Assembly (NCBI RefSeq): GCF_023055435.1 | Contig: NW_025963868.1 | Location: 23,870,001 to 23,934,000, forward strand | Source of the DNA: Haliotis rufescens | Lineage: Eukaryota | Length of the DNA stretch: 64,000 nucleotides | Direction of reading: 5' to 3' | Shown: in pieces, positions 8,519 through 53,164 of the stretch | Layout of the letters: each line of letters begins with the position of its first letter | Position numbering within the stretch: position 1 is the first letter of the stretch | The notes under the pieces: generated by a model | Databases searched by the model: none | What the model saw: the letters and a program-made list of their open reading frames with translations, nothing else | Told to the model about the DNA's origin: nothing | Program-made: the position numbers and the translations under genes

Positions 8519-10101
8519 TCAGTGACTTCCAACGATCACTGCCACAGTAGACAGATAACCCCCAGCCTCAGAGAAGCTAAGTTTGACGTCGTTGTTGTGT
8601 TGATGTAGCATGTTGTTGGGGACGTTGTACTCAAAGACCTCCCATACAGTGTCTTCACCAGCGCCGCTGTGGGTCTGCAGAGAGTAGAAGGACGTCAAGG
8701 TGTGAGTGTTAACAACCACCGTCTTTAGTTTCTGATGTGGAGACTTCATGCTGAAACTGACACTAACCCTCAGACGAACAAAGTCAATATTTCCAACGCG
8801 CGGGACGTTTACTTTAACATCGACGACGATGTTGTGAATGGGGACTACCATGTCGGGGGAGTAGTAGGTGTTCTGTGTCACAGTCGGAGCATGGGCAAAG
8901 TTGTGGGTTGTGTGGAATTGGAAGTAACAACTCGCTTCAGCAGGAACGGTTACCATGGAGTTCGTGACGTGAACTGGTTGGTTTGTAGCTAGAGTTGGTT
9001 TCTTTTGTGCGTTTAGATATTCACAGGTGGACTTTCCACTTGTGGGATGAAACCAACCTTTGTCAAAATGTAGCGTTACATGACTTGGCTTTTGGTCATG
9101 GTTATGGAGAAGAATGTTAAGACCGCCGTTCCTTTGATCAACTAAAACGTGGGGCACAATATTTCTCTCACTGTTATGGAACTGACTGTCTACTCGCAAG
9201 TATGTCATTGTGTCATAGAAGGACTTCCAGAACTTGAAAGCTTGGGCAATGTCCCTCTCGTTGTGGTTTTTATCAAGGATGCTGTAGTTAATACTTGCCT
9301 GCCCAAGTCGATCGGTATATGTGAGCAAGAAAGCTACCGCTTTTCTCATGACATCCCGACGTTGAAGAAAGGTGAATATCTGGGAATTATGTTGATAAAT
9401 ATACGCCCAGTCAAGAAAGGTGGATGGTTTTTGTACATCAAGTCCTGAAACCTGACCGAGACCAAATTCACTGACAATGATATCAATCAATTTACCTTTC
9501 TTCTTATTAGAATAGCTCTCAACGAGATCCAGAAGACCAAAGAGCTTAGCTTCGGAACTCCCGTGGAAATAGTGTGAGCCTCCACTCACATCCATGCTTG
9601 TGTAGGAATGAAATGAGAAAAAGTCTAAATGGTTCAGAGCCATGTCCAGAAATTCGGCATCTCTCTTCCAATTCCGGAAGTCGTTACGATCGAACAACAT
9701 AGAAGCTCCAGTTAACGTAGGCCCTCCGACCTTCATATTGGGATATTTTGCCTTAATCTTCTGAGCTACTGCCTGATGAAATGTGATAAAGGTAGTCCAG
9801 TTTGTGTTCTTCCATTGACTTTCTGGTTCATTGATGACTTCGAAGAACTGAGGTGGTTTTCCCTTGGATCCTTTGTTGACTGCGTCGATCAGCAGGAAGA
9901 CGAACTCGGCTGCAGCATCGATGTTGTTAGGGAAGAATCCGTGGTGGGCTGAGGTGTCAAGCCAGTGAGGCCAAGTGATACCTGGATACAAAACCATTAT
10001 TGTTTGTAACGACAGTGAAATATCGATGCGATGCGGTCAACTTTATCGACTATAGATAGTTTGGATATTAATATGCTGAGAATAAGCACATAAGTGTTAA
10101 T

Positions 10102-10173
<72 letters not shown>

Positions 10174-12564
10174 CGTCAGTCCATGTACTTCACAGGTTTG
10201 CATAAACTACGTCCCCTCGTGTATAGACCGCGTATAGTCATTATTTAACTAACAAATCAAACAACGGTATAGCTCATGTCAGAGGAGAAATAGCGAGTGC
10301 TCTGACCAATCAATTTCATGCAATATTTATTATGCAGCCATCTGCTCAAGACATTGCTTCATTTTAAGACAGTGCTTAAGACATATGCACATGTGCTATA
10401 AACGGCACCATGTCATTAGTTAACTACAAATAGTCACACGTCTGTACACACACTTAAGGGCAAATGTATTCACGGGGGATGGAGCAAGCTGGTAAACATC
10501 ACCAGTACACCGAGGACGTGTTATCCTGTTATTGAATGGAATTCAATTTGTCTGCAGATTTCTCCCTGAGCGACGTGGCCATGGCTTCCAACTGCACCAC
10601 GCCCTCTACAGGTACCTACCAGTATTGCCCTGTACCCTATATCCCCCGTGAACTTCCGGGTTAGAATTGGTCCTCAGCAGCCTCTTGTCGCACGAGGCGA
10701 CTAACGGGATCGGGTGGCCAGGATCGCTGATTGGCTGATTCATGTCGTCGTGTCCCAATTAATAATTGATGCTCATGATGTCAGTCACTAGATCCAGGCT
10801 CGACTATTTACAGACCGCTGTCTTATAGCTTGAATATTACTGAGTGTGGCANNNNNNNNNNNNNNNNNNNNNNNNNNNNNNNNNNNNNNNNNNNNNNNNN
10901 NNNNNNNNNNNNNNNNNNNNNNNNNNNNNNNNNNNNNNNNNNNNNNNNNNNNNNNNNNNNNNNNNNNNNNNNNNNNNNNNNNNNNNNNNNNNNNNNNNNN
11001 NNNNNNNNNNNNNNNNNNNNNNTCACCTCTCATTCTGAAAGAAAAGCCCTTATTGTCTTCTGAACATTTGACATTGTGTTGCATTTCATGTCCTACCATT
11101 TTGCTATCCCACCTGCCCCTTGGCTAATCAGAGCCTATCGCCTTCTATCAACAACCCTCAATGTATTTTATGAACACATTTAAGACACGTGAGCTTTAAT
11201 TCACAGTGAAAACTGAACTACCCTTTATTTCCATGACAACTTCTGGATGTTGATAACCATTCACATTGTCCAAGTATTTGGTGCAGATTTCGTTTTGATG
11301 GGCCTGAAAGTACTTCGGGTCAGGATAGCCCATTTTGTTGGGGTTCTCAGGTGCCTGACATGAAAGGTGATAGAGGGTTAGTCATTGATCTTTACCTTAT
11401 GACATAATATATACCTTAAACATTTTGTACAGATTACAGAGATAAAGGGAGTTAGACTGTTGGTAATAATATGCCTTTGGGGAATGTTTAGTGTAAGTGG
11501 AATCAGTGGAAAACAGTATCAGGACTACCATTGAAACCGACCATGAAGAAGCCGAACTATGGAAAATGTACACCCTTTCAATAGAAATAGCCACACAAAT
11601 TACAAACTTGACATACAATCTACAGATTACTGTCTTTTGTGGGCGATTTTTCGGACTTTTCACTGGATAGTATCTCTTTATTTAGCCTTTTGGCTTGGTG
11701 AAATGGATACACCATCAATTAGATATGTATTTTGGTCAATATTTATCAGAAATTTAGTTCAGTTTTTCCCCACATTCTGCTAATATAAAGTCAAAGCATT
11801 TCAGCATGACATTCCATTCCATTTCTAAATACATGAGTGACGTCATGTTTGACTGAAAATTAATGACTTTGTTGGGTTTCTTACGATGTTGATCAACATG
11901 TGTTTTCTGGTTTGCGGGTATAATTGAGTTTTTAATCATCAGAAATTTTAACATTTTAATTTTTAAACGTCAACGACAGAGAATAATCAGTCTCAAACAT
12001 AGTCCCAAAATAGATTCCCTTAATAGATTCCATATGGCATTAGGGCAAACAAAGTGTCGGACAATATGTGAATTGTTATAACGTCGTCGGTTCCAAAATT
12101 AATCATATTTCCGGGCAACACAAAACATTGAAAACTTATAATGTTATCTTCTTAATGTATAAACATAATAATTATACGGTAACCAAGTGCTAATGAAAAC
12201 ATAAAGAACGCCCCACCTTCTGAAATAATCCCTCTGCCAAATCTAAAAGTAATAATATATAAATGTCCTAAAAGGAGAAACATAATAATTATACGGTAAC
12301 CAATTGCTTATGAAATAATGCAATACGTCCCACCTTCTCAAACAGTCCACCTGCCAAATCTCTGTTCAACCACCTGGCTGTCGTTGCTCCAACCCCCTTA
12401 ACAAGAGGAATTGATGATGAGCTGTCCAATCCATTCTTCCCATTCCATCGACCGTGGTCGAAATGTGTAACTTTGCCAATCTTGAGAATTTCAGGATAAA
12501 TGGACACGGTGTAATCACATCTTGCGCTTGATAGAATGGACACGAAAAGTGTCAGACATTTCAT
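8519..12564 (-). CDS. GH86-like beta-porphyranase/beta-agarase, paralog A (secreted, 3 exons, 608 aa)
   Basis: Exons 12564-12334 (ATG MKCLTLFVSILSSARC signal peptide; AAG|GTGGGA), 11354-11222 (tgtcag|APENPNKMGYPDPKYF...VVMEIK G|GTAG) and 9981-8519 (tccag|GITWPHW...VGSH*). 231+133+1463=1827 nt, in frame. Clan GH-A motifs FFEVINEP and IVSEFG with the two Glu 120 aa apart, plus KVGGP and DFFSFHSY. AATAAA at 8487-8482. Confidence 0.85.
10103..10172. repeat. (CA)n microsatellite in gene A intron 2
   Basis: Perfect CA run. Confidence 0.95.
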
Positions 12565-12777
12565 CTCTGCTGCTTTCACGATAGATATCGCCTAACGAGA
12601 GAATCAGTGCCAATCTGTTGACAAGACTGTACCTTATATCCATGCATTGGAAAGAATGGTGCTATCTTATCAGTTGAACAATCCCTACAGTACATGTAGA
12701 CATTTTAACCATAAAAAGACGTCAGAGTGAGATTTAAAGCTAGTTCAGAAATAAATCCGTTCCGCACCAATACATGT

Positions 12778-13756: not shown

Positions 13757-13757
13757 A

Positions 13758-13804
<47 letters not shown>

Positions 13805-13806
13805 AT
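13757..13806. repeat. (TAAA)n microsatellite
   Basis: About 12 units between genes A and B. Confidence 0.95.
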
Positions 13807-15571: not shown

Positions 15572-18500
15572 ATGAACGCAGTAGAACTGAAATGTATGAT
15601 ACTTTTCGTGTCTGTTCTGTCAAGTGTTCGATGCGATTACACAGTTTCCATTTACCCCGAAATTCTCAAGATTGGGAAAATTACTCATTTCGACCACGGG
15701 CGATGGAATGGGAAGAACGGACTGGACACACCGGCATCAATTCCTCATGTTAAGGAGGTTGGAGCTACAGCAGCCAGGTGGTTGAACAGAGATTTGGCAG
15801 GTGGACTGTTTCAGAAGGTGGGACGTATTGCATTATTTCATAAGCAATTGGTTACCGTATAATTATTATGTTTCTCCATTTAGGACATTTATATATTATT
15901 ACTTTTAGATTTGTGGGTTGTTCTTGAATATCCAATGCCATGGAATAACATTTTGAACCGAAGACGTTTGTCTTTACGCCCTATGGAATTTGTTTTGGCA
16001 TATATTTGAAACTGACTATTGTCTGTGGTTGACGTATTAAATTCCAAAGGATAAAATTTACGGGTATCAAATTATCAATAATTCCTGCAAAATCTGAAAA
16101 CATGTTTATCGACATTATAAAACACAGTCGGTTATTGTCATTGTCATCCTTTGTCAACTTTCACAGTTTGTATTTTCAATCGTGTACCCATATGTACAGG
16201 ATGTTTCTATATAGTAAGAGGTAAAGATGAGTGACATACCCTCTATCACCTTTCATGTCAGGCACCTGAGAACCCCAACAAGAAGGGCTATCCTGACCCG
16301 AAGTACTTTCAGGCCCATCAAAACGAAATCTGCACCAAATACTTGGACAATGTGAATGGATACCAACATCCAGAAGTTGTCATGGAAGTAAAAGGTTGTT
16401 CAGTTTTTACTCTTGTGTGAATTAAAGGTTGCGTGTCTTAGATGTGTTCATAAAATCCATTGAAAGTTGTCAATGGAAGGTGATACTCTCTCATTAGACA
16501 AGGGGTTGGCGGGATAGCAAAGACGGAGACATATAGCAAAGAGGGAGGACATGATATGTAGACCTGATACAACCACAATGACAAATGTTCATTAGACAAC
16601 AAGGGCCATTCTTGTAGGTTGTGGATGAGGTGAAATGGGGTGCAACGTCACATTCAAGATGAANNNNNNNNNNNNNNNNNNNNNNNNNNNNNNNNNNNNN
16701 NNNNNNNNNNNNNNNNNNNNNNNNNNNNNNNNNNNNNNNNNNNNNNNNNNNNNNNNNNNNNNNNNNNNNNNNNNNNNNNNNNNNNNNNNNNNNNNNNNNN
16801 NNNNNNNNNNNNNNNNNNCTAATGCCATTTTTTAATAGTGCTAGCCCACTGATATATAGCCCACTGCTGCAGTTAAACATGAATACCCCACTCAGACACA
16901 GTATACTGACTCTGAGTCGATCAGTCCTTGTTTTAGCCCCTGAATGTCGAGCACGAGGCAGGGTAACAAGTACCATCTTTTAACGTCTTTTGGTATGGCG
17001 CGGTCTTGGATCGAACCAACGACCTTCCGCTCGCCGGGTGGACGCTCTATCCACTGGACTAAGCAGTTGGCAATTCTTTTTGAATGAGATGATCAATAAC
17101 ACAGTATGCACGTGTTTGTGTGGTTGCTTGTGCTAGTCCGTACTTGCTGCATTTGATCATGAATATCCCACTCACGACTCCGAGCGCCAGACAGGGTAAC
17201 AACAAGTACCATCTTTTGGTTTGAAACCACCAACAACCCGCTCTCCGTTTTTGAGAATGGGTGGTGGCAGATTGCATTAATGCTGTTGTTATTTATAAAA
17301 ACAAAAAATAGAATATGTGCTCATTCTCAGCATATTTGTATCCACACTATTGAGTCGACAGTGTTTACCTTGTCATTGATATATTGCAACCGGGCTTTGG
17401 ACAAGTTGAACCTCATCGATATTTTGCTGTTGTTATCTAATGGGTTTTTTATATCCAGGTTTGAATTGGCCTCACTGGCTGGACACCTCAGCCCACCACG
17501 GATTCTTCCCTAACAACATCGATGCTGCAGCCGAGTTCGTCTTCCTGCTGATCGACGCAGTCAACAAAGGAACCAACGGAAAACCACCTCAGTTCTTCGA
17601 AGTTATTAATGAACCAGATGCTCAAGGAAAGAACACAAATTGGACTACCTATGTCAAATTTCATTTGGCTGTTGCTCAGAAAATTAAGGCAAAATATCCC
17701 AATATGAAGATTGGAGGTCCAACCTTAACTGGAGCCTCTTCTCATTTTGACCGTTATGACTTCCGGATTTGGAAGAGAGTAGCAGAGTTTCTGGACATGG
17801 CTCTGACGCACCTAGATTTCTTTTCCTTTCATTCCTACACAAATATGGATGTAACAGGAGGGTCGCATCATTTCCATAGGAATTCCGAAGCAAAGATATT
17901 CGGTCTTCTAGATCTAGTTGAGAGCTACTCTCATAAGAAGAAAGGTACTCAGTTCAACGTCATTGTCAGTGAATTTGGCCTTGGGCCATTAACAGGAATT
18001 GATGTACAGAAACCATCCACCTTTCTTGACTGGGCGTATATTTATCAACATAATTCCCAGATATTCACCTTTCTTCAACGTCGGGATGTCATGAGAAAAG
18101 TGGTAGCTTTCTTGCTCACATATACTGAACTTAAAGGGCAAGCAAGTATTAACTACAGCATCCTTGATAAAAACCACAACGAGAGGGACATTGCGCAAGC
18201 TTTCAAGTTCTGGAAGAACTTCCATAAGACAATGACATACTTGCGAGTAGACAGTCAGTTCCATAATGCTGAGAGGAAGATTGTACCCCACGTTTTAGTT
18301 GATCAAAGGAACGGCAGCCTCAGCATTCTTCTTCATAACAATGACCAAAAGCCAAATCATGTGACCCTACATTTTGACAAAGGTTGGTTCCATCCCACAA
18401 GTGGAAAGTCCACCTGTGAATATCTAAACGCACAGAAGAAACCAACTCTAGATACAGACACACCAGTTCACGTCACAAACTCCATGGTAACCGTTCCTGC

Positions 18501-18921
18501 TGAAGCGAGTTGTTACTTCCAGTTCCACACAACCCACAACTTTGCCCATGCTCCGACTGTGACCCAGAACACCTACTACTCCCCCGACATGGTAGTCCCC
18601 ATTCACAATACCGTCGTCGATGTTGAAGTAAACGTCCCACCCGTTGGAAATATTGACTTTGTTCGTCTGAGAGTTAGTGTCAGTTTCAGCATGAAGTCTC
18701 CACATCAGAAACTAAAGACGGTGGTTGTTAACACTCACACCTTGACGTCCTTCTACTCACTGCATACCCACAACGGCCCGGATGAAGACACTGTATGGAA
18801 TGTCTTTGAGTACAACGTCCCCAACAACATGCTACAACAACACAACAACGACGTCAAACTTAGCTTCTCTGAGGCTGGGGGTTATCTGTCCACTGTGGCA
18901 GTGATCGTTGGGAGTCACTGA
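15572..18921 (+). CDS. GH86-like beta-porphyranase/beta-agarase, paralog B (secreted, 3 exons, 613 aa)
   Basis: Exons 15572-15817 (AAG|GTGGGA), 16262-16394 (tgtcag|GCA...AAA G|GTTG) and 17459-18921 (tccag|GT TTG AAT TGG). 1842 nt in frame. NEP and SEFG motifs intact. AATAAA at 18952-18957. An N-gap lies inside intron 2. Confidence 0.85.
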
Positions 18922-20994: not shown

Positions 20995-21261
20995 GACCCG
21001 TGAAGATTCCGGGGTAGAATAGGTCTTCAGCAACCCATGCTTGCCGTAAAAGGTGACTATGCTTGTCGTAAAAGGCGACTAAAGGGATCGGGTGGTCAGA
21101 CTCGCTAACTTGGTTGATGCATGTCATCGATCCCAATTGCGCGGATCGATGCTCATGATGTCAATGACTGGATTGTCTGGTCCAGACTCGATTATTTACA
21201 GACCGCTGTCATATAGCTGGAATATTGCTGAGTGCGGCGTTAAACAACAAACAAACAAACA
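20995..21261 (+). mobile_element. SINE-like family 2 (GACCCGTGAAGATCC head, (AAAC)n tail)
   Basis: Dispersed copies at about 1568-1811, 2705-2974(-), 10644-10851, 26212-26444, 32172-32385, 36655-36875(-) and 52290-52505(-). Tail GCTGGAATATTGCTGAGTGCGGCGTTAAAC. Confidence 0.78.
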
Positions 21262-38465: not shown

Positions 38466-39544
38466 ACGTTTGAATATGTTTCGAGTGTTTGTGTGAGCGT
38501 GTATCTGCATGTACGTATAGGTGTCCGTGCGTATGTACATGTGTTGATAGGTTGTATCACAATATGTTGAATGTGTAATCACGTCATAGCGTAAGAACGT
38601 TGAGCAACTTGCTCCTGCTTTTGCTGCAAAGGTATTCAAAAAGCATTTTGAAATACTCACAATTAAAACATAATATCTAAATTGAACCACTTGTTGATGA
38701 TAAAAGTCTAGCCTGCTTTCAAGAAAGACAACCTTTGTATTATGTTAAATATGCATAATCCTTTGAATCAGCCTTGCAGTAAATTCCCTCACAACACATC
38801 ACTTTGATACGCCAGATGCCGAGCCATGTTAAGTGGCATTTCGTATGCCGCAGTGCAGAATGCTGGCTGCTGTGAAATGTTTAGCTTGTGTGCGGATACC
38901 TGTATTCCAATGATGACATAAATATTTCGTCTTTGTTGCAAATAGTTACAAATCAGTAATTTAAAACCTTACAACGTTTAGCCCTGAGTTTATGAGCACG
39001 CATGGTCATGTATTCTATGTGAAAATCCAAATGTAATATATAGAGAGAGCTTTCTAGACCCCTTAGCATTTTCACTTTCAACTTGAAGGGAATTGGTGAT
39101 CAGTTGTTTATCCTTAACCATAACCAAAGAGCGCATTGTCAGAACCTCGAAGTATATTTGTGACAACTGAGATCGTGACTGTATTATCAAATGATCAACG
39201 TATCCCAACACAAATGTTCCTGGGATAAAAGGAATGTTAAAGTGATATCGTTCACAATAAATAAAACAGAAGTTCTCTCACTACTGTATATTTTTGTATT
39301 TCATTGTTAGAGAGAAGGATGAATAGATGTGTTTTCTGTAGTCCGTTCTAAAGTACTTCTTATAAATAGCTCACTTTTACCATTTGAAAGCTCATTGTAG
39401 TTGTAATACGTCCACATGGGTATTTGTTATACACAGCATGTAGTTCACGGTGTTACATATGAAGTACCTATTAAATGTTTTGATCATAATCAGATTCTGA
39501 AATATTATTCATTCAGTTTTTGGGATTCCTTACATGTATCACCC

Positions 39545-42500
39545 TCAGTGACTTCCAACGATCACTGCCACAGTGGACAGATAACCCCCAGCCTCGGAGA
39601 AGCTAAGTTTGACGTCGTTGTTGTGTTGATGTAGCATGTTGCTGGGGACGTTGTACTCAAATACCTCCCATACAGTGTCTTCACCAGCGCCGCTGTGGGT
39701 ATGCAGTGAGTAGAAGGACGTCAAGGTGTGCGTGTTAACAACCACCGTCTTTAGTTTCTGATGTGGAGACTTCATGCTGAAACTGACACTAACTCTCAGA
39801 CGAACAAAGTCAATGTTGCCAATGTTCGGGACGTTTACTTTAACATCGACGACGGTGTTGTGAATGGCGACAACCATGTCGGTGGAGTAGTAGGTGTTCT
39901 GTGTCACAGTCGGAGCATGGGCAAAGTTGTGGGTTGTGTGGAACTGGAAGTAACAACTCGCTTCAGCAGGAACGGTTACCGTGGAGTTTGTGACGTGAAC
40001 TGGTTTGTTTGTATCTAGAGTTGGTTTCTTCTGTGCGTTTAGATATTCACAGGTGGACTTTCCACTTGATGTATGGAACCAACCTTTGTCAAAATTAAGC
40101 TTCACGTGACTTGGCTTTTGGTCAAGGTTGTGCAAAAGAATGCTGAGACTTCCGTTCCTTTGATCAACTAAGACGTGCGATACAACCTTTCTTTCAGCGT
40201 TATGGAACTGACTGTCAATACGCAAGTATGTCATTGTGTCATAGAAGGACTTCCAGAACTTGAAAGCTTGCGCAATGTCCCTCTCCTTATGGTTTTTATC
40301 AAGGATGCTGTAGTTAATACTTGCCTGCCCAAGTAGATCAGTATATGTGAGCAAGAAAGCTACCGCTTTTCTCATGACATCCCGACGTTGTAGAAAGGTG
40401 AATATCTGGGAATTATGTTGATAAATATACGCCCAGTCAAGATAGGGGGAGGGTTTCTGTACATCAAGTCCTGATACCGGACCGAGACCAAATTCACTGA
40501 CAATGATATCAATCAATTTACCTTTCTTCTTCTGAGAATAGCTCTCAACAAGATCCAGAAGACCAAATAGCCTAGCTTCGGAACTCCCGTGGAAATGGTG
40601 TGAGCCTCCACTCACATCCATACTTGAGTAGGAATGAAATGAGAAAAAGTCTAAATGGTTCAGAGCCATGTCCAGAAATTTAGCCAATGTCTTCCAAGTC
40701 CGGAAGTCATTACGGTCAAACAAAATTGAAGCTCCAGTATACGTTGGCCAACCGACCTTGATATTCGGATATTTTGCCTTAATCTTCTGAGCTACAGCCC
40801 GATGAAATGTGATAAAGGTAGTCCAGTTTGTGTTCTTCCATTGACCATCTGGTTCATTGATTACTTCAAAGAATTGAGGCGGTTTTCCATTGGTTCCTTT
40901 GTTGACTGCGTCGATCAGCAGGAAGACGAACTCGGCTGCTGCATCGATGTTGTTAGGGAAGAATCCGTGGTGGGCAGAGGTGTCTATCCAATGAGGCCAA
41001 TACAAACCTAAATAAGAAAAATAATGCCTCTGAGTGAGTGAATGAAAGTGCATCCTCTTCTGTCAACAACTTTTAAAGGATATTATGACGACATTATTCA
41101 TTATTATTTGTGAGAAATGAGGTTACTTCTTTCGACCATAGAATATAAGATAAACACTCCTCAAAACACACTCGCGTGATAACCTCTATTGATTCAAACT
41201 GGAATAATAATTGAAATACCTTTTATTTCCATGACAACTTCAGGATTGCCATATCCATTCACGACGTTCAAGTAACTGTTGCTGATTTTGTTTTGATTGG
41301 CCTGAAAGTACTTCGGATCAGGATAGCCCTTCTTGTTTGGGTTCTCAGGTGCCTGACATGAAACGAGATAGAAGGTTAAATGTTCAAGTGAGTGAGTGAG
41401 TGAGTGAGAGAGTGAGAGTTTTAAGCTGCTGTGGACTGTTTTATATTACGGCATGTCAACATGCTTGGTTGCTCAAACAATATTAGGACTAACCAGGATT
41501 CGAAATTTTGATCATAGGTCTCTGGCAGGCCAAAGGGGCGTAACACTGCACAACCAGTCGCGACACCTCAGTGCGTCCTGTACCTCTTGAAATTTAATCA
41601 TGCCCCTTACACGATTAGTATTAGTATGCCATTGCTGAATTTATCTTGTAAGTTAGATCGTTGGGTAGTGATATGTATTGAGTGGCATTACAGTTGCATG
41701 AGGCGAGGAGCTAGCCTTACACCTCGGTCGTCACGAGGTGCCGTGGTTCAACTCCTCACACGGGTACATTGTGAGAGAGTGAGTGGGTGAGTGGGACACT
41801 GAGTGGGCGAGTGAGATAGTGAGTGTGTGAGTGGGAGTGATGTTTAGCTATAAAACGATACGAACATGTTTCTAATAATTGCATCCTGTCAGCAAAGGAC
41901 AGCGAAACAGTTTGAACAATATTGCACATTGAAAATTATTTTAAATTATCACCATTATCACCAACAGTAAACTAAGTTAGACCACGTTTCTAGAGACCAT
42001 GGAGGACATCAATTCGGCTACTAGTTGCTGTATGCAATGCCACACTCCCAACTCATCCACACTAAGTGTGCCCTGTCGTGATATTGCTATGATGTTGCTA
42101 AAAACGGCGTAAAACCCAGTCCCTTAAATATTCCTTCTTTCAGAGGTGGCACAGTCGTCAAAGGCGCACGCGAGAAACGTATGATCGTGAGTTCGAATTC
42201 CTGTTTGCCCCGTTTATGTTTAGGTTTGTCTCCTTACTCTTGGTTTGCACCAAAGTGGTAGACGTTAGAAACATGCATCACCTCAGGCTTTCTTCCCACA
42301 TTAAGCTGACACGCTGTGACATAACTGGAATACTGTTAAAAGCAGCGTTTAACCAAACTCTCTCGCTCACTCATTTATAAGGAGGAGCATTACAGTGCTA
42401 TTTTAAGACTCGGATATAATAAAATATGTCCCACCTTCTCAAACAACCCGTTTCCCAAGTCTCTGTTCAACCATCTGGCTGCGGTAGCTCCAACCTCCTT

Positions 42501-42665
42501 AACAAGAGGAATTGTTGTTGAGCTGTCCAATCCATTCTTCCCATTCCATCGCCCGTGGTCGAAATGTGTAACTTTCCCAATCTTCAGAATTTCAGGAAAG
42601 ATGGACACGGTGTAATCACATCTTGCGCTTGATAGAATAGACACGAAAAGTGTCAGACATTTCAT
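39545..42665 (-). CDS. GH86-like beta-porphyranase/beta-agarase, paralog D (3 exons, 608 aa)
   Basis: Exons 42665-42435, 41352-41220 (APENPNKKGYPDPKYF...VVMEIK G|GT) and 41007-39545 (atttag|GT TTG TAT TGG). 1827 nt in frame. Both catalytic motifs intact, but GGP is changed to GWP. Confidence 0.83.
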
Positions 42666-43108: not shown

Positions 43109-43603
43109 CTGTTGTAACTGAGACGCCAATGTATTATTAGTACATAATTATAAACATATATCATATATATTCGTGTTGTTAGGGAGGGGTACATTTAAAA
43201 CATAACAGTGGCATGTGCAGTGACTAACATTTAGCTGTAGCATATACAAATATTTTGAATGACATCTTCATGATAGAGATTTGTGATAATATTCATGAAA
43301 TGTCAGATGGCATTGGAGTGATTCTGTGAGCCAAACTTCGTTTTTTGCAGTTGAAGGTTAGTAGTGGGACATGATACTGGTATAATCTATGCCAACACGA
43401 ATAAGTGTAATGACGTCTTATTACAAGAAGGTCGCACTTTGGTTGAATGTCGCAAAAAATAGAGTTAATTCAACATCATTCATATACTTTTAACCGCTAA
43501 CATGCCTTTGGAATGTTCTGGCGGATAATCGGGAGTTATTGTTCTCTGGCGTTGACGTTTTAGGTAATGCATTTGACGATTGAATTGTCATCCCTGATCT
43601 CGA

Positions 43604-43722
43604 GGTTGGTCCGTTGCTGACTGCGTCGACCAGCAGGAAGACGAACTCAGATGCAGCATCGATGTTGTTAGGGAAGAGTCCGTGGTGGGCAGAGGTGTCC
43701 AGCCAGGGAGGCCAACTCACAC
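43604..43722 (-). pseudogene. Exon 3 5' fragment (A-type) of a GH86-like gene
   Basis: WPPWLDTSAHHGLFPNNIDAASEFVFLLVDAVSNG, then homology is lost. A SINE sits at its splice acceptor. 43908-43950 matches the end of gene A intron 2. Confidence 0.8.
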
Positions 43723-44649
43723 CTGGAGTAAGTGAGTAGGTGAGTATGGTTTTACGCCGCTTTTAGCAATTTACCAGCACTATCACGGCGGGGGACACCA
43801 GAAATGGGCTTCACACATTGTACCCATATCGGGAATCGAACCCGGTCTTCGGCGTGACGAGCGAACGCTTTAACCACTAGGCTACCCGACCACCCCTCAC
43901 ACGTGGATACAAAACCATGTGGTGTGTAACGACAGCGAAATATCGATGTGCGTCATGATCATATAGCTGGAATATTGCTGAGTGCGGCGTTAAACAACAT
44001 ACCAACAATCAAAAGATCGATGTGGTGTAACTGTGACAATATAAGCAAAGTGTGCATCACACCATGAAGGCTGATGTGATATAGTTGTATTATTGCTGAC
44101 TGCGGCCACACAAATGCAAACATACAAGAACGTCTGTAGTGTTTGGCATTCTTAGAGGCGTAGACACAATTAGGTTACTCAAAGGAACGGTGTTAACAAA
44201 GAATAATTTGAATCATGCTTGCGTGCGTTAATCAACAACGCACTGAGCAATATCCAAGGTATACGACGACGACCTGTAAATAATCGAGTTTGGACCAGTC
44301 AATCCATTGATTGATATTATAAGTAACGATTCGGGGTTCATTCACGAGCTATCAACCATGTCACCGTGCCTGATTCTGACCACCCGACTATTTTGGTCGC
44401 TTTTCTGGGGACGACATCCATATCAATCGAAAAAAAAGTTCCCGGAATATTTTGACAAAAATTATTATATTTCAAATTGTCAGGAAAAAAAAGAAATTTT
44501 CTCCCAAAGAAATTATATTGTTGCAATGTGTTTTTTAAGAAATGTGTTGGCTCGTAGTTAGAATTAAAAACATATTTTGTTTCAAGACAAAATCCTGGCA
44601 AACACCCTACACCCCCACATTTCTCAACTTCAACTGTAAATATTTGTTC

Positions 44650-44888
44650 TTGTCTTCAATTTCAGTTTCTGGGCAACAACCTGGTGAATTTAACAATGAT
44701 TGTCCAGTTCATAGAATGAATCTGTGAATCTGGTTCATTGATGACTTCAAAGAATAACGGAACCTTCTCATTGGTTCCTGTGTCGACTGCTTCCATGACT
44801 TGAAAGGTAAACTCTGCTGCCACGTCGATGTTGTTGGGGAAGACGCCGTGGTGCTCGGACTTGTCCAGCCAGTGAGGCTAATCAACAT
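44650..44888 (-). pseudogene. Exon 3 5' fragment of a third-subfamily GH86-like gene
   Basis: VD*PHWLDKSEHHGVFPNNIDVAAEFTFQVMEAVDTGTNEKVPLFFEVINEPDSQIHSMNWT. Trp codon changed to TAG, then a frameshift near F-HQVVAQKLK. Confidence 0.8.
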
Positions 44889-46333
44889 CTGCAAAGACCC
44901 AGAAGATAAGGTATCGACATTTATTATTCATGAGGCCCTAGCAGTTTTTGTTTGATAGAGCATATTTTTCTCAGTCGGCTCTTCAGAACACCGAGATAAT
45001 TTCTATGAAAATAAAAGCCAAACACATTTTTCTTACCCACACCACTTTATTTTTCACAACCACAAGAATGTCTAGTGAAATATATTATCTTTGTCAATGA
45101 TGAAGACAATTATGTTTTGGTGCTTACCTTTTTCGCGAACACGTGGTATCGTAACAGATTTCCAGTGTTTTATTCATATAACTGACAAAGCTATTTTGAC
45201 TTTTAAGCTAAAGTGTAATATGTATGGGCGGATAATCTAGACTGGTAAATCTCTTGCATTGACAATTTATATTCAGTATTTGGGGAACAGGTTTATTTTT
45301 TCTTAATCCCAACTAGCCTTGTTTTTCTTAAGTGAGATTGTTACTTAGTACAGGCTTGATCAAGCTTGTAAACTTTAGCAAAAAAGCAGAACCTTCCTTG
45401 GATTTTCTATTTCGATTCATATACTCTGTTATTCTTAGTACTGAAGATGAAATTAGCGCTGGTGGTGGTCCCTAACGTAATGTGAAATGATTCGGAGGTT
45501 GGAGGTTTTGAACAGGTGCCGTTGATATAAAATGTACGTCCAAATAGTCATATTAATGTATTTTTCTGTCAATACCAGCACCAAGAACGCTGTTATCTTT
45601 GTTTGTCATCGATCACAAGTTATCATCAAAAATATGTAATTCTTATGCCTAGAAGGTTCCTGAGACAACTTTTCAAAGAAGGATTTGATTATGGTTTATC
45701 ATCTTTTGTAAAAGATGTTCAATGTCTCTTGCGAAAATAAATTACGGCTTTTACTGAACATGACCCTTTGTCACAAATAAATACGTCCTTGTGGATTATA
45801 CTGAAGAGCTTAACATCTTCATAATCTACACCTGCGGCAATTGGAGTTTTCCTAATACCTTAAGGCGACACCCAAGCGTCATGAAAACACATCTTAAGTC
45901 GTTATCTAACGATATACAAGTCGTGTTTGTCTAGCCATATATTCAAGGCTTGGTTATATGGACATATATTCACGTCGTGTGTTGTGTTTTCAGTATATAA
46001 TTTGACTAAGACTAGACATCAACCTTCATAACAACTTTGCCTGCAGCCATGTCGTAAAATCACGGACTTTTAGTGGAATTTGTAAACTATATATGGAGTT
46101 TCGCCTTGAATATATATGGGGGCACGCGTGGCCAAGTCGTCTAAGGCGCCGCGTTTCTACGCGATAATGTTTCTAGGTTTGTCAAGCACCATGCCCATGC
46201 TCGTGGGTTTTGACGAAGTCTTAGACCTGCATCATTTCGGGCTTTCCTCCCACATTAAGGTGTCATGCCACGATATAACTGGAATACTGTTAACAACGGC
46301 GTTAAACCCAACTCACTCACTCACTTGAATATA

Positions 46334-47864
46334 TAGTCAAATTAAAAACTTCACATTTTTAAATGTAATCCCATATATGATATACGACGGACAAATGTAT
46401 CAGAGAAGGTAATTTTTTATCATTAATGTCCAAAGAAGGATTTTAATTACCGGTGGTAACCATAATTTGTTCCAAGCACCTACGGGATTCGGTAATAACA
46501 TGAACAGTTTAAATCATAAGTCCCAAGCACGAGAATCTGATAGCACACAAGTTCAGTAGCGTGTATGGCCACCATGTGCGTTGACAACTGCCACACAACG
46601 CCTCCGCATGGACCTTGTGATGCTTGTGACACATGATTGGGAAGACGACGCCATTGTTGCTGCAAAATGGTGCCAAGATCTTGCAAATTCCGTGGTTGGT
46701 TCTGGAGAGTGCACAAGAGACTTCTGCCAAGAGCATTCCAGATGTGTTCGATGGGATTGAGGTCGGGAGACCTTGACGGCCAGTCCATGACGTTGACTCC
46801 CGCATTCTGAAGGAAATTCCTTGTCAAAATTGCTGTGTGGGGTCTGGCATTGTCGTGTTGGAAGATCAAACCGGGTCCATGTGCTGCCATAAAAGGCAGA
46901 AGTTCTGGTGCCAGTACCTAGTCGCGGTAAGCAGCAGCGTTGAGGTTGCCACGGATGACAAGAAGCCTGGAACGTGCATTGCCACAGAAAGCACCCAACA
47001 CCATGACACTTCCGCCTCGAAATCTGTCAACTTCCTGTACACAACACTGGGCGTAACGTTCATGACGGCGCCTCCACACCCTCGCCCTACCATCAGCAAA
47101 TCGAAGATTAAATCGGGATTCATCACTGAAGACGACTTGTTTCCAATTCCTCTGAGTCCATCGTAAGTGTCGCTGTGCCCACAATTGACGTTGACATCTG
47201 TGTAATTGAGTCGAAATCGGCCCGCAGTATGGCCGTCGTGCTTGAAGGTGAGCAGTTCTCAGACGGTTTCGAACAGTTTGCGCACTCAGTCTACCCCTAA
47301 ACAGTTCATTTCTTGTTGATGTAGCCGTCAAAAATCGGTTACGGAGGTGACGTTAAGATAACCTGATGTCTTCTGCATGTGACGTCACACATGGTCGACC
47401 TGGCCGAGGGCGATCAGCGGTCTTACCCGTTTGCTGTAGACGCGTCTGTAAATCATAAACAGTCCGTCGACTACAACCCATCGTCCTTGCGACTTCAGCT
47501 ACGGTCGTTCCCGTCTGCAACATGCCGATGGCACGTTCACGTTGCAAATTTGAAAGTCGTGGCATGACAAATGGCCGTAAAGACTTTTGTTTGCTTGTGT
47601 TTTTCTTTTTTTGTTCATGAATGCTAAAAAAGTATGCCTGAAACACGTGCAGTATTATGGCCACGTGACCACTTGCACGTGAAAAAACACTTTTGCCACT
47701 ATAGCGCTGTGCACATGATTTTGATCGATTCACCTGCACATAAACGGTGTTATCTGAAGACAATACGTGGCCATTACTGTTTAAATACACAATAAGGGCC
47801 CACAATGATAACTGGTCAAAATGTTAAAATTTTAGGATTGTGAACTTTTTAATTTGGTTCAGTA
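46334..47864 (-). mobile_element. Inactivated Tc1-family DNA transposon (second family)
   Basis: Imperfect TIRs (CAAATTAAAAA.TTCACA) in TA context. Transposase at 47565-46553 (MPRLSNLQRERAIGML..., FSDESRF, FQHDNARPH, SPDLNPIEHIW) split by several frameshifts. Confidence 0.88.
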
Positions 47865-49248: not shown

Positions 49249-49605
49249 GACCGCCTCCGTGGTCTAATGGTAGAGCGTCCGCCCGGAGAGCGAAAGGTCC
49301 GGGGTTCGATCCCCGACCGCGTCATACCAAAATACGTTAAAAGATGGTACTTGTTGTTATCCTGTCTGGCGCTCGGCATTAAGGGGCTAAAACAAGGACT
49401 GGTCGGCTCGGAGTCAGTATACTGTGTCTGAGTGGGATATTCATGTTAAACTGCGGCATGGTATCTCAGTGAGCTAGCACTATAAATCGGCATCAGTCCG
49501 GACTAGTACAAGCAGCCACACAAACACAAACACGTACATGCACGTCGCTATATAAGTGCAATAATCTTGGACGCGACGTTAAACCCCATTTCACCTCACC
49601 TCACC
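49249..49605 (+). mobile_element. tRNA-derived SINE family 4 (Meta-domain-like), (CACCT)n tail
   Basis: A and B boxes, then GTCATACCAAAA..TTAAAAGATGGTACTTG..TGGCGCTCGGCATTAAGGG, which resembles the MetaSINE central domain. Copies at 57280-57645, 58252-58609 and about 16830-17060(-). Confidence 0.75.
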
Positions 49606-50757
49606 TATCAGAAATGAGCGGGCCACTGTAACTTGATTAGGCCCTCTTCTTGCTTGACGACGGACCATTATCAATTATCATTTGTTCTATGACATTTCCA
49701 TATTTGTAAAAGTGGGTCAGTGACATTCGGTGTGTGTTAATTGCAGTAATGTTTCAAAACCAATATTTTTATTTGATAACAAATTCTACCCATTTTAGCT
49801 TTAATAACGGTAACGCTATTTTTCAGGGCATTGATATTTGCAGAAGCCCTGGGTCTTTCCAACAGTTAATGATAATGTCCTGTGAAAATAGCATTCCCTG
49901 ATAACAATGATTCGTTAATCAGGAAAATTGTTACGACGAATGATATTGCGTCCGGATTAACGGAACTTAACTTCACACGTACCTTGCAAACAGAGCCTGC
50001 GAGAGATCCCTGCAGATCCACCCGGTGGTCACAGCTCGAAGATTCTTCATTATTGACACCTGAGCCGGGGTGTCAAACCCGTTTTACCATTCCACTTTTC
50101 ATTGTCACGCTTCCGATTTTAAGTTTCGGGGGAAACTGTGAGTGAATAGTCCCCTCATGCGACATTGCACAGAACGGTCAGCAGAAGCACCTGCACTGCG
50201 AGATGTTCATATGCTGACGACACAAATTGTTGGGTCCTTGTCCTATCTTATCATGGAAGGTCTAGACTGTGTAAATCCATATTACATTGTAACGTCTGCA
50301 GAACGTACACACCCATGTTTGATTGTGCAGAAACATGACACAAACACGAAACGGTTATTCGAAGGTTATGTGTTTGATACAGGAATCACTGTTGTATTTT
50401 GGACCATGAGTGTTTCTATGGGTTTTTTATGTTTTGGTCAAATCCAGTTTTCGAGTGTAGACCTTCTTTTGCGCGGAAGTGTATATGAATCCCACTTTTA
50501 CTAAATCCCTGATGAGCCGCGTTGTACATAAAAACCTATGTGCCTAATGTATTTTAAAAAATAACTACCGAACAAGAAAGAAACATTTTCACCTCTGACT
50601 TTATTCATACATACAGTGGTTGGAATTGTTTTGTCTCGAATGCATTACCTTGAAGAATAAAGGATGACTTTGTTAATTGTTTGAGGTTTTTAGCTTCAAA
50701 GGTCATCGTCATAATTATGTTTATCGTGAATTCTCTCTCTGACCATTGACAAATAAT

Positions 50758-53164
50758 TCAGTGCCTGCCTACCACCAATGCGACGGTAGACACAAAGCCT
50801 CCAGTGTGAACAAAGGTAATCTTAACATCGTTGCTGTGCTGTCGTACGATGCTCGCAGGGACGTCATACTCGTAGGTCTCAAACACCGTGGAACTGGAAT
50901 GGCCAGCCTGGAGGGAGTAGAAGGAGGTCAAGGGGTGATTGTTCATCATGATCGTCTTTGGAGGTCCGTGAGTGGCCTTGCTGTCTCTGCTGAGACTGAT
51001 CCTCAGACGAACAAAATCAATGTTGCCAATGCTCGGGACGTTTACTTTAACATCGACGACGGTGTTGTGAATGGGGACAACCATGTCGGGGGAGAAGTAG
51101 GTGTTCTGGGTCACAGTCGGAGCATGGGCAAAGTTGTGGGTTGTGTGGAACTGGAAGTAACAACTCGCTTCAGCAGGAACGGTTACCATGGAGTTCGTGA
51201 CGTGAACTGGTTTGTCTGTATCTAGAGTTGGTTTCTTCTGTGAGTTCAGATATTCACAGGTGGACTTTCCACTTGTCGGATGGAGCCAACCTTTGTCGAA
51301 ATTTAGTTTCACGTGCGTGGGCTTTTGGTCGTGGTTGTGAAGAAGGATATAAACAGTTCCTGAAGATTTGTCCAGTAGGATGTGAGGCACAATGTTCCTC
51401 TCAGTATTGTGGAACTGACTGTCCACCCTCAAAAACATCATCGCATTGCGGAAGTTCATCCAGAACTTGAAAGCATCAGCAACATCCCTTACGTTCCTGT
51501 GCCTGTCAAACAAACTGTAGTTGATGCTTGCTTGTCCTTTAAGCTCAGTGTAGGTCAGCAAGAAAGCAACAACCTTTCTCATCACATCACGACGTTGAAG
51601 GAAGGTAAACATTTGGTCGTTGTGTTGATAGATATGGCCCCAGTCAATGAAAGGGGATGGTTTCTGTTCATCCAACCCCGATATACTTCCCATGCCATAT
51701 TCACTGATGATAACATCGAACGTCTTTCCTTTCTTCTTATGGGCATAACTCTCAATAAGGTCAAGAAGACCAAACAACTTTGCTTCAGAGGCATGGAACT
51801 GGTGGGTACCTCCGTGAACGTCCAGGCCAGAGTAGGAGTGAAAGGAGAAAAAGTCGAGATGATCCAGAGCCATGTCCATGAAGTCAGCCATCTTGCTCCA
51901 GACCCTGAATCCATTGGCGTCATAATTAGAAGATGCGCCTGTATACGTGGGCCCTCCCACTCTGATTTGTGGATATTTCGATTTGATTTTCTTAGCTGTC
52001 ACTTCGTGGTATGAGATGAATGTCGACCAGTTTGTGCTGGCATACTTGCCATCTGGTTCGTTGATGACTTCAAAGAATAATGGAAGGGTTCCTTTGGTTC
52101 CTTTGTCTACAGCGTCAATGAGAAGATACTCAAACTCCGCAGCAGCATCGATATTGTTGGGAAACAACCCCTTGTGGTGGGATTTGTCTATCCAGTGTGG
52201 CCAAAGCTTCCCTGTAAATACATACATTATAGGTAACAAGTTTGTTAGCTTGCTAGTTTTTATATCCGTGAAAGGGAATAATATTTATTTGATGGTTTGT
52301 TGAACTCCGCACTCTGAGCTCCATCTTTATGACGGAATCAGGACCAGACAATCCACTGATAGACATCATGACCATCTTTCTACGCAGTTGGGATACGATA
52401 ACATGCATCAACCAAGTCAGCAAGCCTGACCACCCAATCCCGTTAGTCGCCTCTTACAACAAGCATGGATTGATGAGGACAATTCTTACCAGTAACTTTA
52501 CTTGGGTGTAGGGGAAGTTGGATGGCCTAGTGGTCTGGTGGTTAAAGCGTTCACTCGTCACACTGATGGCAGTTATGAAGTTTTCTGAATATAATTTGGG
52601 CATTTTCACCTGACGTCATCATGACCATTTCCGGTTGGCCGTATCCTTGCATGTTGGCCAAGTATTTTTGTGCGAATTGCCCTTTTTTGGAATCGAAGTA
52701 GGCAGGGTCGGGATATCCCTTCCTGTGGGGGTTTTCCGTTGCCTGGGCAGATAAACGAAACGTTATAATCCTGGTAAGTAAATAGAAGAAATAAAACCCT
52801 TTCCATTTTCATCAGAAATCAATTGACGATTTTGACTCTATCGTAAGCATGTGGGGTTTCACTGTTATTTTGCAATAGGACAATACTAGTATTCAAAATG
52901 TTAAACAGTTTCTATAGACCTTACGTGCTCAAAGACACCGTCCGAACCCTCGGCTTTAACCCATCTGGCCGTCGTTGCTCCTATTTGTTTGACACGTGCA
53001 ATATCAGGGGTGTTGTCAAGGACGTTCTTGCCGTTCCAGCGTCCATGGTCAAAGTTGACGCCATCTCCAATCTTCAGCAACTCAGGGAAGATGGTGATAG
53101 TCTCGTCGCATTGCACCAACGGCAGACAGAAGAACAGCCAAGTCACGATGTGGGCGGCACGCAT
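50758..53164 (-). CDS. GH86-like beta-porphyranase/beta-agarase, paralog E (second subfamily, 3 exons, 608 aa)
   Basis: Exons 53164-52925, 52742-52610 and 52211-50758. 1827 nt in frame. Very close to C, including intron 2 and its SINE. NEP and ISEYG motifs. AATAAA at 50605-50600. Confidence 0.85.

What the first reader, a model, noticed from the sequence alone, without database searches (positions are those of the whole stretch)
8519..53164. Expanded cluster of intron-containing, secreted GH86-like porphyranase/agarase genes in an animal genome
Seen: five intact genes of about 610 aa, each with a signal peptide, FFEVINEP and SE[FY]G motifs 120 aa apart, KVGGP and DFFSFHSY motifs, and a long beta-rich C-terminal region; at least five remnants as well. 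Established: GH86 is a clan GH-A family characterised in bacteria (for example Bacteroides plebeius beta-porphyranase BpGH86A) that cleaves red-algal galactans using acid/base and nucleophile glutamates at beta4 and beta7. Seen: conserved GT-AG introns, polyA signals and host SINEs inside the introns, so this is not bacterial contamination. Inference: a host-encoded system for digesting red-seaweed agar/porphyran in an algae-grazing mollusc, plausibly gained by horizontal transfer from marine bacteria and then amplified. The alternative assignment is another GH-A family such as GH39.
Basis: partly seen in the sequence, partly recalled or inferred. Interest (0 to 1): 0.93.

Follow-up and report, generated by a model that had tools for sequence, protein, structure and literature searches.

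The report
Host-encoded GH86 galactanase gene cluster in abalone
The red abalone genome carries a tandem cluster of five intact, spliced and transcribed genes for secreted enzymes of the bacterial-type GH86 agarase/porphyranase family. This suggests the animal itself may digest red-seaweed gels, a job usually credited to gut bacteria, but no enzyme activity has been measured.

Summary
Window 8519-53164 (Haliotis rufescens) holds five intact three-exon genes of 608-613 aa and six exon relics.

- **Gene structure:** all introns are GT-AG, and intron positions and phases match in all five genes. Transcript contigs from four studies skip both g3 introns.
- **Family:** GH86, not GH39. A mollusc-only profile hits BuGH86 (1e-39), Aga86A_Wa (2e-38) and BpGH86A (1e-26), against GH39 at 2e-4. 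An AlphaFold model (pLDDT 91) matches the GH86 structures at TM 0.70-0.80, against at most 0.51 for other families. Both catalytic glutamates are present in all five genes.
- **Assembly gaps:** two lie in intron 2 of g1 and g2. Three are intergenic.
- **Family size:** the cluster is one of several arrays. About 50 open full-length exon-3 copies were found genome-wide, and the scan flagged other arrays in this genome earlier.
- **Origin:** recent transfer is not supported. Homologues in Mytilus, Pinctada and a chiton form one mollusc clade. No listed non-mollusc hit exceeds about 36% identity, or 30% over a full-length match. The nearest relatives are protist-labelled sequences, so donor and direction stay unresolved.
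- **Function:** red-algal galactan digestion is inferred, not tested.
- **Prior knowledge:** NCBI auto-names these proteins "beta-porphyranase A-like". I found no paper describing them.

The parts
8519..12564 (-). g1, subfamily A, 608 aa. Exons 12564-12334, 11354-11222, 9981-8519. Assembly gap 10852-11022 lies in intron 2.
   Evidence: The exon 2/3 junction is seen as a loose end at 41000.
15572..18921 (+). g2, subfamily A, 613 aa, identical to NCBI model P0002. Exons 15572-15817, 16262-16394, 17459-18921. Assembly gap 16664-16818 lies in intron 2.
35128..38067 (-). g3, subfamily B, 609 aa. Exons 38067-37825, 37111-36979, 36581-35128. Both introns are skipped in transcript contigs.
   Evidence: with boundaries shifted 1 nt by hand in line with the joints (36580>36978 and 37110>37824, CT..AC on the + strand, 'cut +1')
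39545..42665 (-). g4, subfamily A, 608 aa, identical to NCBI model P0001. Exons 42665-42435, 41352-41220, 41007-39545. It has KVGWP in place of KVGGP.
   Evidence: with boundaries shifted 3 nt by hand from the junction contexts.
50758..53164 (-). g5, subfamily B, 608 aa, matching NCBI model P0005 (exon 1 at 100%, exon 2 at 96%, exon 3 at 99% by tblastn). Exons 53164-52925, 52742-52610, 52211-50758.
   Evidence: with boundaries shifted 1 nt by hand from the junction contexts
6072..6203 (+). Relic r1: a truncated exon-1 copy of 44 open codons, subfamily B type.
26852..27028 (+). Relic r2: a decayed exon-1 copy with two stops.
30915..31154 (+). Relic r3: a complete, open exon-1 copy of subfamily B with an intact GT donor. 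No exon 3 follows in the read sequence. It is flanked by gaps 30360-30521 and 31684-31971.
43598..43732 (-). Relic r4: a fragment of the 5' end of exon 3, 45 open codons.
44641..44907 (-). Relic r5: a fragment of the 5' end of exon 3 that includes FFEVINEP, with stops.
49982..50202 (-). Relic r6: a decayed exon-1 copy with stops and a frame change.
35367..35672 (-). Gene-conversion tract in exon 3, shown here for g3. Subfamilies A and B are 89-96% identical here against 60-79% elsewhere, and synonymous sites are homogenised too.
36582..36978 (-). Intron 2 of g3, holding a dispersed SINE-like host repeat. Transcript-contig depth at 36700-36899 is 30,000-85,000.

Best explanation
The region is a tandem array of five functional red abalone genes. 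Each has three exons and encodes a secreted protein of about 610 aa from glycoside hydrolase family 86.

**Fold and chemistry.** Each protein has a (beta/alpha)8 catalytic barrel followed by two beta-sandwich domains. The acid/base glutamate sits in the NEP motif (E173). The nucleophile glutamate sits in SE[FY]G (E293), equivalent to E322 of the Bacteroides uniformis agarase. This predicts retaining hydrolysis of beta-1,4-galactosidic bonds.

**Likely role (inferred).** Extracellular depolymerisation of agar-type red-algal galactans (agarose, porphyran, funoran) in the gut.

**History.** The array grew by tandem duplication into two subfamilies, A (g1, g2, g4) and B (g3, g5). The two also exist in H. 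asinina. They stay under purifying selection, exchange sequence by gene conversion, and have left six exon relics. The array is one part of a family of about 50 genes in this genome. The family is old in molluscs (gastropod, bivalves, chiton). Its ultimate source is probably bacterial but unresolved.
For: **Shown**
- Gene models, GT-AG introns and conserved phases.
- Splicing of g3. Coverage is confined to exons, with zero depth in the intergenic stretch 38300-39299, in four runs from four studies.
- Similarity to GH86 structures. One protein gives 3e-20 to 5e-20. The mollusc-only profile gives 1e-39, 2e-38 and 1e-26, against 2e-4 for GH39.
- AlphaFold model of P0001 (g4) with pLDDT 91.2. Its seven best PDB matches are all GH86, at TM 0.70-0.80. 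Other families reach at most 0.51.
- The nucleophile aligns with the residue mutated in 5ta0 (ISEYS versus ISQYS). This is E322Q in PMC5849685.
- Both glutamates are present in all five genes.
- dN/dS is 0.19-0.25 within subfamilies and 0.11-0.12 between them.
- 72 scored matches in the genome, about 50 of them open and full-length.
- Homologues in Mytilus, Pinctada and Liolophura. Molluscs form one clade with 100% support.
- The same three-exon structure in four divergent paralogue loci.

**Context from papers**
- Abalone viscera are reported to contain agarase activity (PMC11241667).
- Characterised GH86 enzymes are endo-beta-agarases or beta-porphyranases (PMC5849685).
Against: - No activity has been measured for any mollusc member.
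- Identity to characterised GH86 enzymes is only 16-20% in the structural alignment. Specificity cannot be transferred at that distance.
- The residues that separate agarase from porphyranase at subsite -2 could not be mapped reliably.
- Mussels and pearl oysters, which filter-feed (my own knowledge), also carry the family. The ancestral substrate therefore need not be macroalgal agar.
- From my own knowledge, red abalone eat mainly brown kelp.
- The tissues of the RNA runs are coded, so gut or digestive-gland expression is not shown. The runs are only guessed to be RNA.
- g4 has Trp at a nearly invariant Gly (G208).
Confidence: 0.6

Rival explanations
1. The genes and fold are as described, but the natural substrate is not agar or porphyran. 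The mollusc clade would act on another beta-galactan or sulfated glycan, for example from microalgae, biofilms, green or brown algae, or an endogenous glycan.
For: - The clade is very divergent: no listed non-mollusc hit exceeds about 36% identity, and the stem is long at 0.77-0.8.
- It is present in the bivalves Mytilus and Pinctada, which filter-feed (my own knowledge), and related sequences carry protist labels.
- The subsite -2 determinants are not conserved in any recognisable way. Leu stands at the position of BuGH86 T82 / BpGH86A F77 (alignment read).
Against: - The only activities named for GH86 in the papers read are on agar-type galactans.
- The expansions are found in Haliotis, which are macroalgal grazers (my own knowledge).
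- Agarase activity is reported in abalone viscera.
Confidence: 0.25
2. The proteins are secreted but mainly non-digestive, for example glycan-binding, immune or anti-biofilm factors, with hydrolysis secondary or lost.
For: A sister paralogue clade elsewhere in the genome (P0009, P0012, P0020) has Ala in place of the nucleophile and is conserved in three Haliotis species. This shows the scaffold can be kept without catalysis.
Against: All five window genes keep both glutamates and the NEP and SE[FY]G motifs. They evolve under purifying selection.
Confidence: 0.07
3. The genes are a recent, abalone-specific horizontal transfer from marine bacteria that was then amplified.
For: - Most GH86 relatives listed are bacterial or metagenomic.
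- Among animals, homologues were found only in molluscs.
Against: - Homologues in bivalves and a chiton group with Haliotis as one clade at 100% support.
- No listed non-mollusc hit exceeds about 36% identity.
- Intron positions are shared by paralogues that are only 35-47% identical.
Confidence: 0.02
4. The cluster is bacterial contamination or an assembly artefact.
For: Assembly gaps lie within the region.
Against: - Spliced introns are seen in transcript contigs.
- Host transposon relics and SINE-like repeats lie within the array.
- The window sits on a 32.7 Mb scaffold.
- Orthologues exist in H. asinina, H. rubra, H. cracherodii and other molluscs.
Confidence: 0.005

Closest known systems
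BuGH86, the endo-beta-agarase of Bacteroides uniformis NP1 (PDB 5TA0/5TA1/5TA5; PMC5849685)
   Same: - It is the best structural and sequence match: Foldseek E 8e-42, TM 0.80; mollusc profile E 1e-39 over residues 38-608.
- It has the same three-domain layout.
- The NEP acid/base motif is shared, and its nucleophile E322 aligns with the SE[FY]G glutamate.
   Different: - Identity is only about 20%.
- It is a bacterial, intronless gene in a polysaccharide-utilisation locus and is predicted to be periplasmic.
- The abalone genes have two spliceosomal introns and a eukaryotic signal peptide, and sit in tandem arrays.
- The subsite -2 residues are not recognisably conserved.
Aga86A_Wa, a GH86 beta-agarase (PDB 8H97)
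   Same: - Full-length alignment: E 3e-20 with one protein and 2e-38 with the mollusc profile.
- TM 0.80.
   Different: About 18% identity. It is a bacterial enzyme with additional C-terminal sequence.
BpGH86A, the beta-porphyranase of Bacteroides plebeius (PDB 4AW7). NCBI names the abalone proteins after it.
   Same: - It shares the family and fold: TM 0.70, E 7e-33; profile E 1e-26.
- The Pfam domains BPA_C and Porphyrn_cat_1 give sub-threshold hits on the two C-terminal domains.
   Different: - It is a weaker match than the agarases.
- A single-protein search did not find it at E<=10.
- The name 'porphyranase' is therefore not a justified statement of specificity.
Other endogenous algal-polysaccharide enzymes of abalone, such as the GH45 cellulase of H. 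rufescens (PMC11025796); from my own knowledge also PL14 alginate lyases and GH16 laminarinases
   Same: They are the same kind of thing: host-encoded, secreted digestive carbohydrate-active enzymes of a seaweed grazer.
   Different: - They belong to different families and act on different substrates.
- None acts on red-algal galactans.
- I found no paper reporting a GH86 in an animal.

Membership tests
GH86 | Significant full-length sequence similarity to characterised GH86 enzymes, stronger than to any other GH family | tested here: met
   - The mollusc-only profile A2 gives 5ta1 1.3e-39, 8h97 2.1e-38 and 4aw7 1.1e-26. The next family, GH39, reaches 2e-4 over about 50 residues.
- A single protein gives 3e-20 against 8e-4.
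GH86 | (beta/alpha)8 barrel followed by two Ig-like beta-sandwich domains | tested here: met
   - AlphaFold model with pLDDT 91.2 and pTM 0.91.
- The top seven PDB matches are all GH86, with TM 0.70-0.80 over the whole chain.
- The architecture is described in PMC5849685.
GH86 | Clan GH-A catalytic pair: acid/base Glu in NEP and a nucleophile Glu equivalent to BuGH86 E322 | tested here: met
   - E173 is invariant in 40 aligned sequences.
- E293 aligns with the residue that differs between 5ta1 and the E322Q mutant 5ta0.
- Both are present in g1-g5.
GH86 | Hydrolysis of beta-1,4 linkages in agarose or porphyran | not testable with these tools
   This needs a recombinant enzyme assay.
GH86 | Subsite -2 determinants of specificity (agarase T82/M396 versus porphyranase F77/S326) | tested here: inconclusive
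   - Anchored on the invariant Arg (R64), the abalone residue at the T82/F77 position is Leu66 (one search read).
- M396 could not be placed in the chain numbering of the alignment.
- At about 20% identity this is only a lead.
GH86 | Assignment by the CAZy/dbCAN family model | not tested
   - dbCAN is not available here.
- Pfam has no GH86 catalytic-domain model. It gives only weak local GH39 and GH5 hits around NEP, plus BPA_C and Porphyrn_cat_1.
- NCBIfam gives nothing.
   - PF01229 gives 22-30 bits over about 90-100 residues (profile positions 151-244 of 472), around the NEP motif only.
- GH39 structures reach TM 0.48-0.51 against 0.80 for GH86.
Bacterium-to-animal horizontal transfer | Animal sequences nested inside a bacterial clade | tested here: not met
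   - In three trees the molluscs, together with two protist-labelled sequences, form one side of a 96-100% supported branch. All sampled bacterial and metagenomic sequences lie on the other side.
- The trees are unrooted, and both protist-labelled rows are long branches.
Bacterium-to-animal horizontal transfer | Patchy distribution in animals against broad distribution in bacteria | tested here: met
   - Among animals the family was found only in Haliotis, Mytilus, Pinctada and Liolophura.
- Named bacterial relatives come from Bacteroidota, Verrucomicrobiota and Planctomycetota.

The most novel reading that the evidence does not exclude
Molluscs carry their own ancient, intron-bearing lineage of GH86 enzymes. 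It would have been present before chitons, bivalves and gastropods diverged, and may be shared with protists such as choanoflagellates. Abalone have expanded it to about 50 genes. That would give the animal an endogenous ability to depolymerise agar and porphyran, one that current models assign to gut bacteria.
Probability: 0.45. Interest if true: 0.82.

Novelty: new variant of a known kind. Interest (0 to 1): 0.72.

Why it matters
- **Attribution of digestion.** In the papers read here, agarases are listed from microbes (PMC5874223). The study of the abalone gut community looked for agar- and porphyran-active families (GH16, GH86, GH117) in gut bacteria (PMC5870069). A large, expressed, host-encoded GH86 family would change how seaweed digestion by abalone is attributed.
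- **Practical uses.**
  - It would bear on feed design for aquaculture.
  - From my own knowledge, it might explain the seaweed wall-lytic activity of crude abalone gut preparations.
  - It offers eukaryotic, probably glycosylated GH86 enzymes for making agar oligosaccharides.
- **Evolution.** It is a case of a 'bacterial' carbohydrate-active enzyme family long resident in animals. The family has introns, tandem expansion, gene conversion and a paralogue clade without the nucleophile.

Tried and rejected
- **GH39 or GH5 assignment:** rejected. There are only local hits around NEP, and the fold match is much weaker.
- **Contamination:** rejected.
- **Recent transfer:** rejected.
- **Haliotis paralogue clades older than the gastropod-bivalve split:** withdrawn.
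  - Two taxon sets gave 91-99% support for Mytilus grouping with one Haliotis clade.
  - Support fell to 55% once Pinctada and chiton were added.
  - An AU test does not reject a single Haliotis clade (p = 0.39).
- **Naming the nearest non-mollusc sequences:**
  - A scan with P0072 found no relative among bacterial and archaeal species genomes.
  - A word search with P0031 found only itself, a Mytilus protein and one unnamed protein.
- **NCBIfam:** no hit.
- **'Careful' mixture-model tree:** it did not finish in the time allowed. The quick PMSF trees and LG+F+G4 ultrafast-bootstrap trees were used instead.
- **Literature:** ten searches found no paper on animal GH86.
- **Joined spliced models:** not sent to any search.
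  - g2, g4 and g5 were represented by the database proteins P0002, P0001 and P0005.
  - g1 and g3 were handled exon by exon.
- **Subsite mapping:** M396 of BuGH86 could not be placed.


Full report
**1. What is in the sequence**

The window has five ORFs of 492-502 aa. They are 68-90% identical to one another at the protein level.

A search of 5.8 billion proteins returned NCBI models from Haliotis rufescens. P0001 is 100% identical over exons 1 and 3 of g4, and P0002 over exon 1 of g2. P0005 matches g5 at 96-100% per exon. The other exons match at 92-97% by tblastn, partly because hits overrun splice sites. The window is therefore red abalone, at G000:C90:23870001-23934000 on a 32.7 Mb scaffold.

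Mapping these proteins back gives the same three-exon structure for all five genes:
- Exon 1 is 231-246 nt and encodes a signal-peptide-like N-terminus and the first beta-strands. It ends in phase 0.
- Exon 2 is always 133 nt and ends in phase 1.
- Exon 3 is 1454 or 1463 nt.
- All ten introns are GT-AG. No exon has an internal stop, and the products are 608-613 aa.
- The exon ends of g3, g4 and g5 were adjusted by 1-3 nt by hand from the junction contexts. The adjusted set was not re-run.

I did not send joined models to any search. The database proteins stood in for g2, g4 and g5, and g1 and g3 were treated exon by exon.

Six relics are present: four exon-1 copies and two fragments of the 5' end of exon 3. 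The exon-1 copy at 30915-31154 is complete and open.

**2. Assembly gaps**

- Gap 10852-11022 lies in intron 2 of g1, and gap 16664-16818 in intron 2 of g2. No reading frame crosses a gap.
- For g1, a transcript contig carries exactly the g1 exon 2/exon 3 junction. It appears as a loose end at 41000, read against the junction sequences.
- For g2, continuity rests on the assembly and on NCBI's model.
- The other three gaps are intergenic. Two of them flank the solo exon-1 copy, so a hidden sixth gene cannot be excluded.
- No N was filled or looked up.

**3. Host context and expression**

- Contigs of four public runs from four studies cover the exons of g3 and exon 3 of g4. They skip 36581-36977 and 37111-37823, with ends CT..AC on the + strand, which is GT..AG on the gene's strand.
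- The intergenic stretch 38300-39299 has zero depth in all four runs and serves as an internal silent control.
- The runs are only guessed to be RNA, and their tissues are coded. Transcription and splicing are therefore supported, but the site of expression is not.
- Intron 2 of g3 and g5 holds a dispersed repeat. There are six further copies in the window, one of them in intron 2 of g1. Its depth in the transcript contigs is 30,000-85,000, as expected of a host SINE.
- Two decayed Tc1/mariner transposons lie within the array.

**4. Family**

- One exon-3 protein matches the GH86 structures 8H97, 5TA1 and 5TA0 over residues 43-487 at E 3e-20 to 1e-19. GH39 xylosidases reach 8e-4 over about 85 residues.
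- A profile built from 18 mollusc proteins only gives 5TA1 1e-39, 8H97 2e-38, 4AW7 1e-26 and GH39 2e-4.
- Pfam has no GH86 catalytic-domain model. It returns weak local GH39 and GH5 hits around NEP, plus sub-threshold hits to the two porphyranase beta-sandwich domains.
- An AlphaFold model of P0001 has pLDDT 91.2. Its seven best PDB matches are all GH86, with TM 0.70-0.80. GH30, GH79, GH39 and GH51 follow at 0.41-0.51.
- The glutamate of SE[FY]G aligns with the single residue that differs between 5TA1 and 5TA0. This is the E322Q nucleophile mutant of PMC5849685.
- The NEP glutamate is invariant in a 40-sequence alignment. All five genes keep both glutamates.
- GH86 membership is therefore met on every feature testable here, and GH39 is rejected.

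**5. Specificity**

PMC5849685 attributes agarose versus porphyran selectivity to subsite -2: T82/M396 in the agarase against F77/S326 in the porphyranase.

Anchored on an invariant arginine, the abalone residue at the T82/F77 position is leucine. The second position could not be mapped. The NCBI name 'porphyranase' is therefore not justified as a statement of specificity. The agarases are in fact the better matches.

**6. Evolution within the window**

- Subfamily A (g1, g2, g4) copies are 89-93% identical in exon-3 DNA. Subfamily B (g3, g5) copies are 96% identical. A against B is 73%.
- dN/dS is 0.19-0.25 within subfamilies and 0.11-0.12 between them, which indicates purifying selection.
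- A tract of about 300 nt in exon 3 is 89-96% identical between subfamilies. Its dS is 0.07-0.20, against more than 2 elsewhere.
- The same tract is homogenised between the H. asinina orthologues of A and B.

**7. Size and age of the family**

- A six-frame search of the genome scored 72 of 225 candidates. About 50 are open, full-length exon-3 copies in arrays on C90, C1, C190, C445 and on smaller scaffolds, some of which may be allelic duplicates.
- The scan's first readers had flagged such arrays elsewhere in this genome.
- Four divergent paralogue loci show the same three-exon layout.
- Named homologues occur in H. asinina, H. rubra and H. cracherodii. They also occur in Mytilus, in the pearl oyster Pinctada and in the chiton Liolophura.
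- An exhaustive HMMER search of 1.84 billion representatives found 351 hits. The top ones are all molluscan. Below them, sequences align at 23-36% identity, and at most 30% over a full-length match. The named ones come from Bacteroidota (including Flammeovirga) and Verrucomicrobiota.
- In three trees the molluscs form one clade with 100% support, on a long stem.
- Whether the Haliotis expansion predates the split from bivalves is unresolved. Support was 91-99% in two taxon sets and 55% with more taxa, and an AU test does not reject one Haliotis clade (p = 0.39).

**8. Origin**

- The sister group of the molluscs consists of two long-branch sequences (94-99% support as a pair, and 96-100% with the molluscs).
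  - P0072's cluster includes a Picozoa single-cell assembly and marine metagenome contigs.
  - P0031 comes from an unnamed EukProt transcriptome. It has a signal-peptide-like start and many N-glycosylation sequons.
- A partial transcript of the choanoflagellate Diaphanoeca grandis is 34% identical to P0072.
- No close relative of P0072 was found among bacterial and archaeal species genomes.
- The trees are unrooted, and bacterial contamination of the protist data is not excluded.
- A bacterial source is plausible from the family's overall distribution. The donor, the direction and the number of transfers are not established. A recent, abalone-specific transfer is excluded.

**9. Literature**

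Ten full-text searches found no paper reporting a GH86 encoded by an animal. The papers read list agarases from microbes or look for them in gut bacteria. One notes agarase activity in abalone viscera.

**10. Verdict**

The feature is real, host-encoded, expressed and well classified. It is already auto-annotated by NCBI, but apparently not described in the literature. The catalytic mechanism is well supported. The substrate and the digestive role are inferences (about 0.6). The scenario of recent transfer from bacteria is not supported.

Noticed in passing
window 27212-28330 (-): A single-exon ORF of 372 aa sits in the middle of the array. It has an N-terminal membrane anchor and a DXD glycosyltransferase domain (PF04488, E 3e-8). 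It looks like a Golgi-type glycosyltransferase gene unrelated to GH86.
   Followed up: partly
window 7128-8092 (+) and 46480-47805 (-): Two decayed Tc1/mariner-type transposons, with HTH_Tnp_Tc3_2 and DDE_3 pieces split over several frames, lie between the GH86 genes.
   Followed up: partly
window 36700-36899; also 1584-1733, 2783-2911, 10635-10793, 21059-21186, 26275-26398, 32120-32336, 52211-52606: A dispersed repeat of about 130-220 bp, probably a host SINE. It is present in intron 2 of g1, g3 and g5, with depth of 30,000-85,000 in the transcript contigs.
   Followed up: partly
window 35367-35672 (g3) and the matching part of exon 3 in g1, g2, g4 and g5: A gene-conversion tract between subfamilies A and B. 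dS is 0.07-0.20 here against more than 2 elsewhere. The same tract is homogenised in H. asinina.
   Followed up: yes
window about 40750 (g4, residue 208 of P0001): g4 has KVGWP where at least 90% of 40 aligned GH86 sequences have Gly-Gly. This may be functional divergence or early decay.
   Followed up: no
L002 (G000:C1:76829000-76836600); proteins P0009, P0012, P0020: A paralogue clade conserved in three Haliotis species has Ala in place of the catalytic nucleophile (SAHG or SAYG). These are candidate non-hydrolytic GH86-like proteins.
   Followed up: partly
proteins P0031, P0072, P0133: - Protist-labelled sequences are the nearest relatives of the mollusc clade: an unnamed EukProt transcriptome, a Picozoa single-cell assembly and the choanoflagellate Diaphanoeca grandis.
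- P0072 also carries a GH3 N-terminal fragment at its C-terminus.
   Followed up: partly
proteins P0026 (Mytilus edulis) and P0027 (Mytilus coruscus): These gene models join GH86 pieces to a DDE transposase domain or a sulfotransferase (CHST1) domain. They are probably annotation chimeras.
   Followed up: no
G000:C90:25280321-25281711 (-): A GH86 copy about 1.35 Mb beyond the window is split over two frames and has a TAA stop.
   Followed up: partly
window 30915-31154 (+), gaps 30360-30521 and 31684-31971: A complete, open exon-1 copy with an intact donor site is flanked by two assembly gaps. The rest of a sixth gene might be hidden in unread sequence.
   Followed up: no
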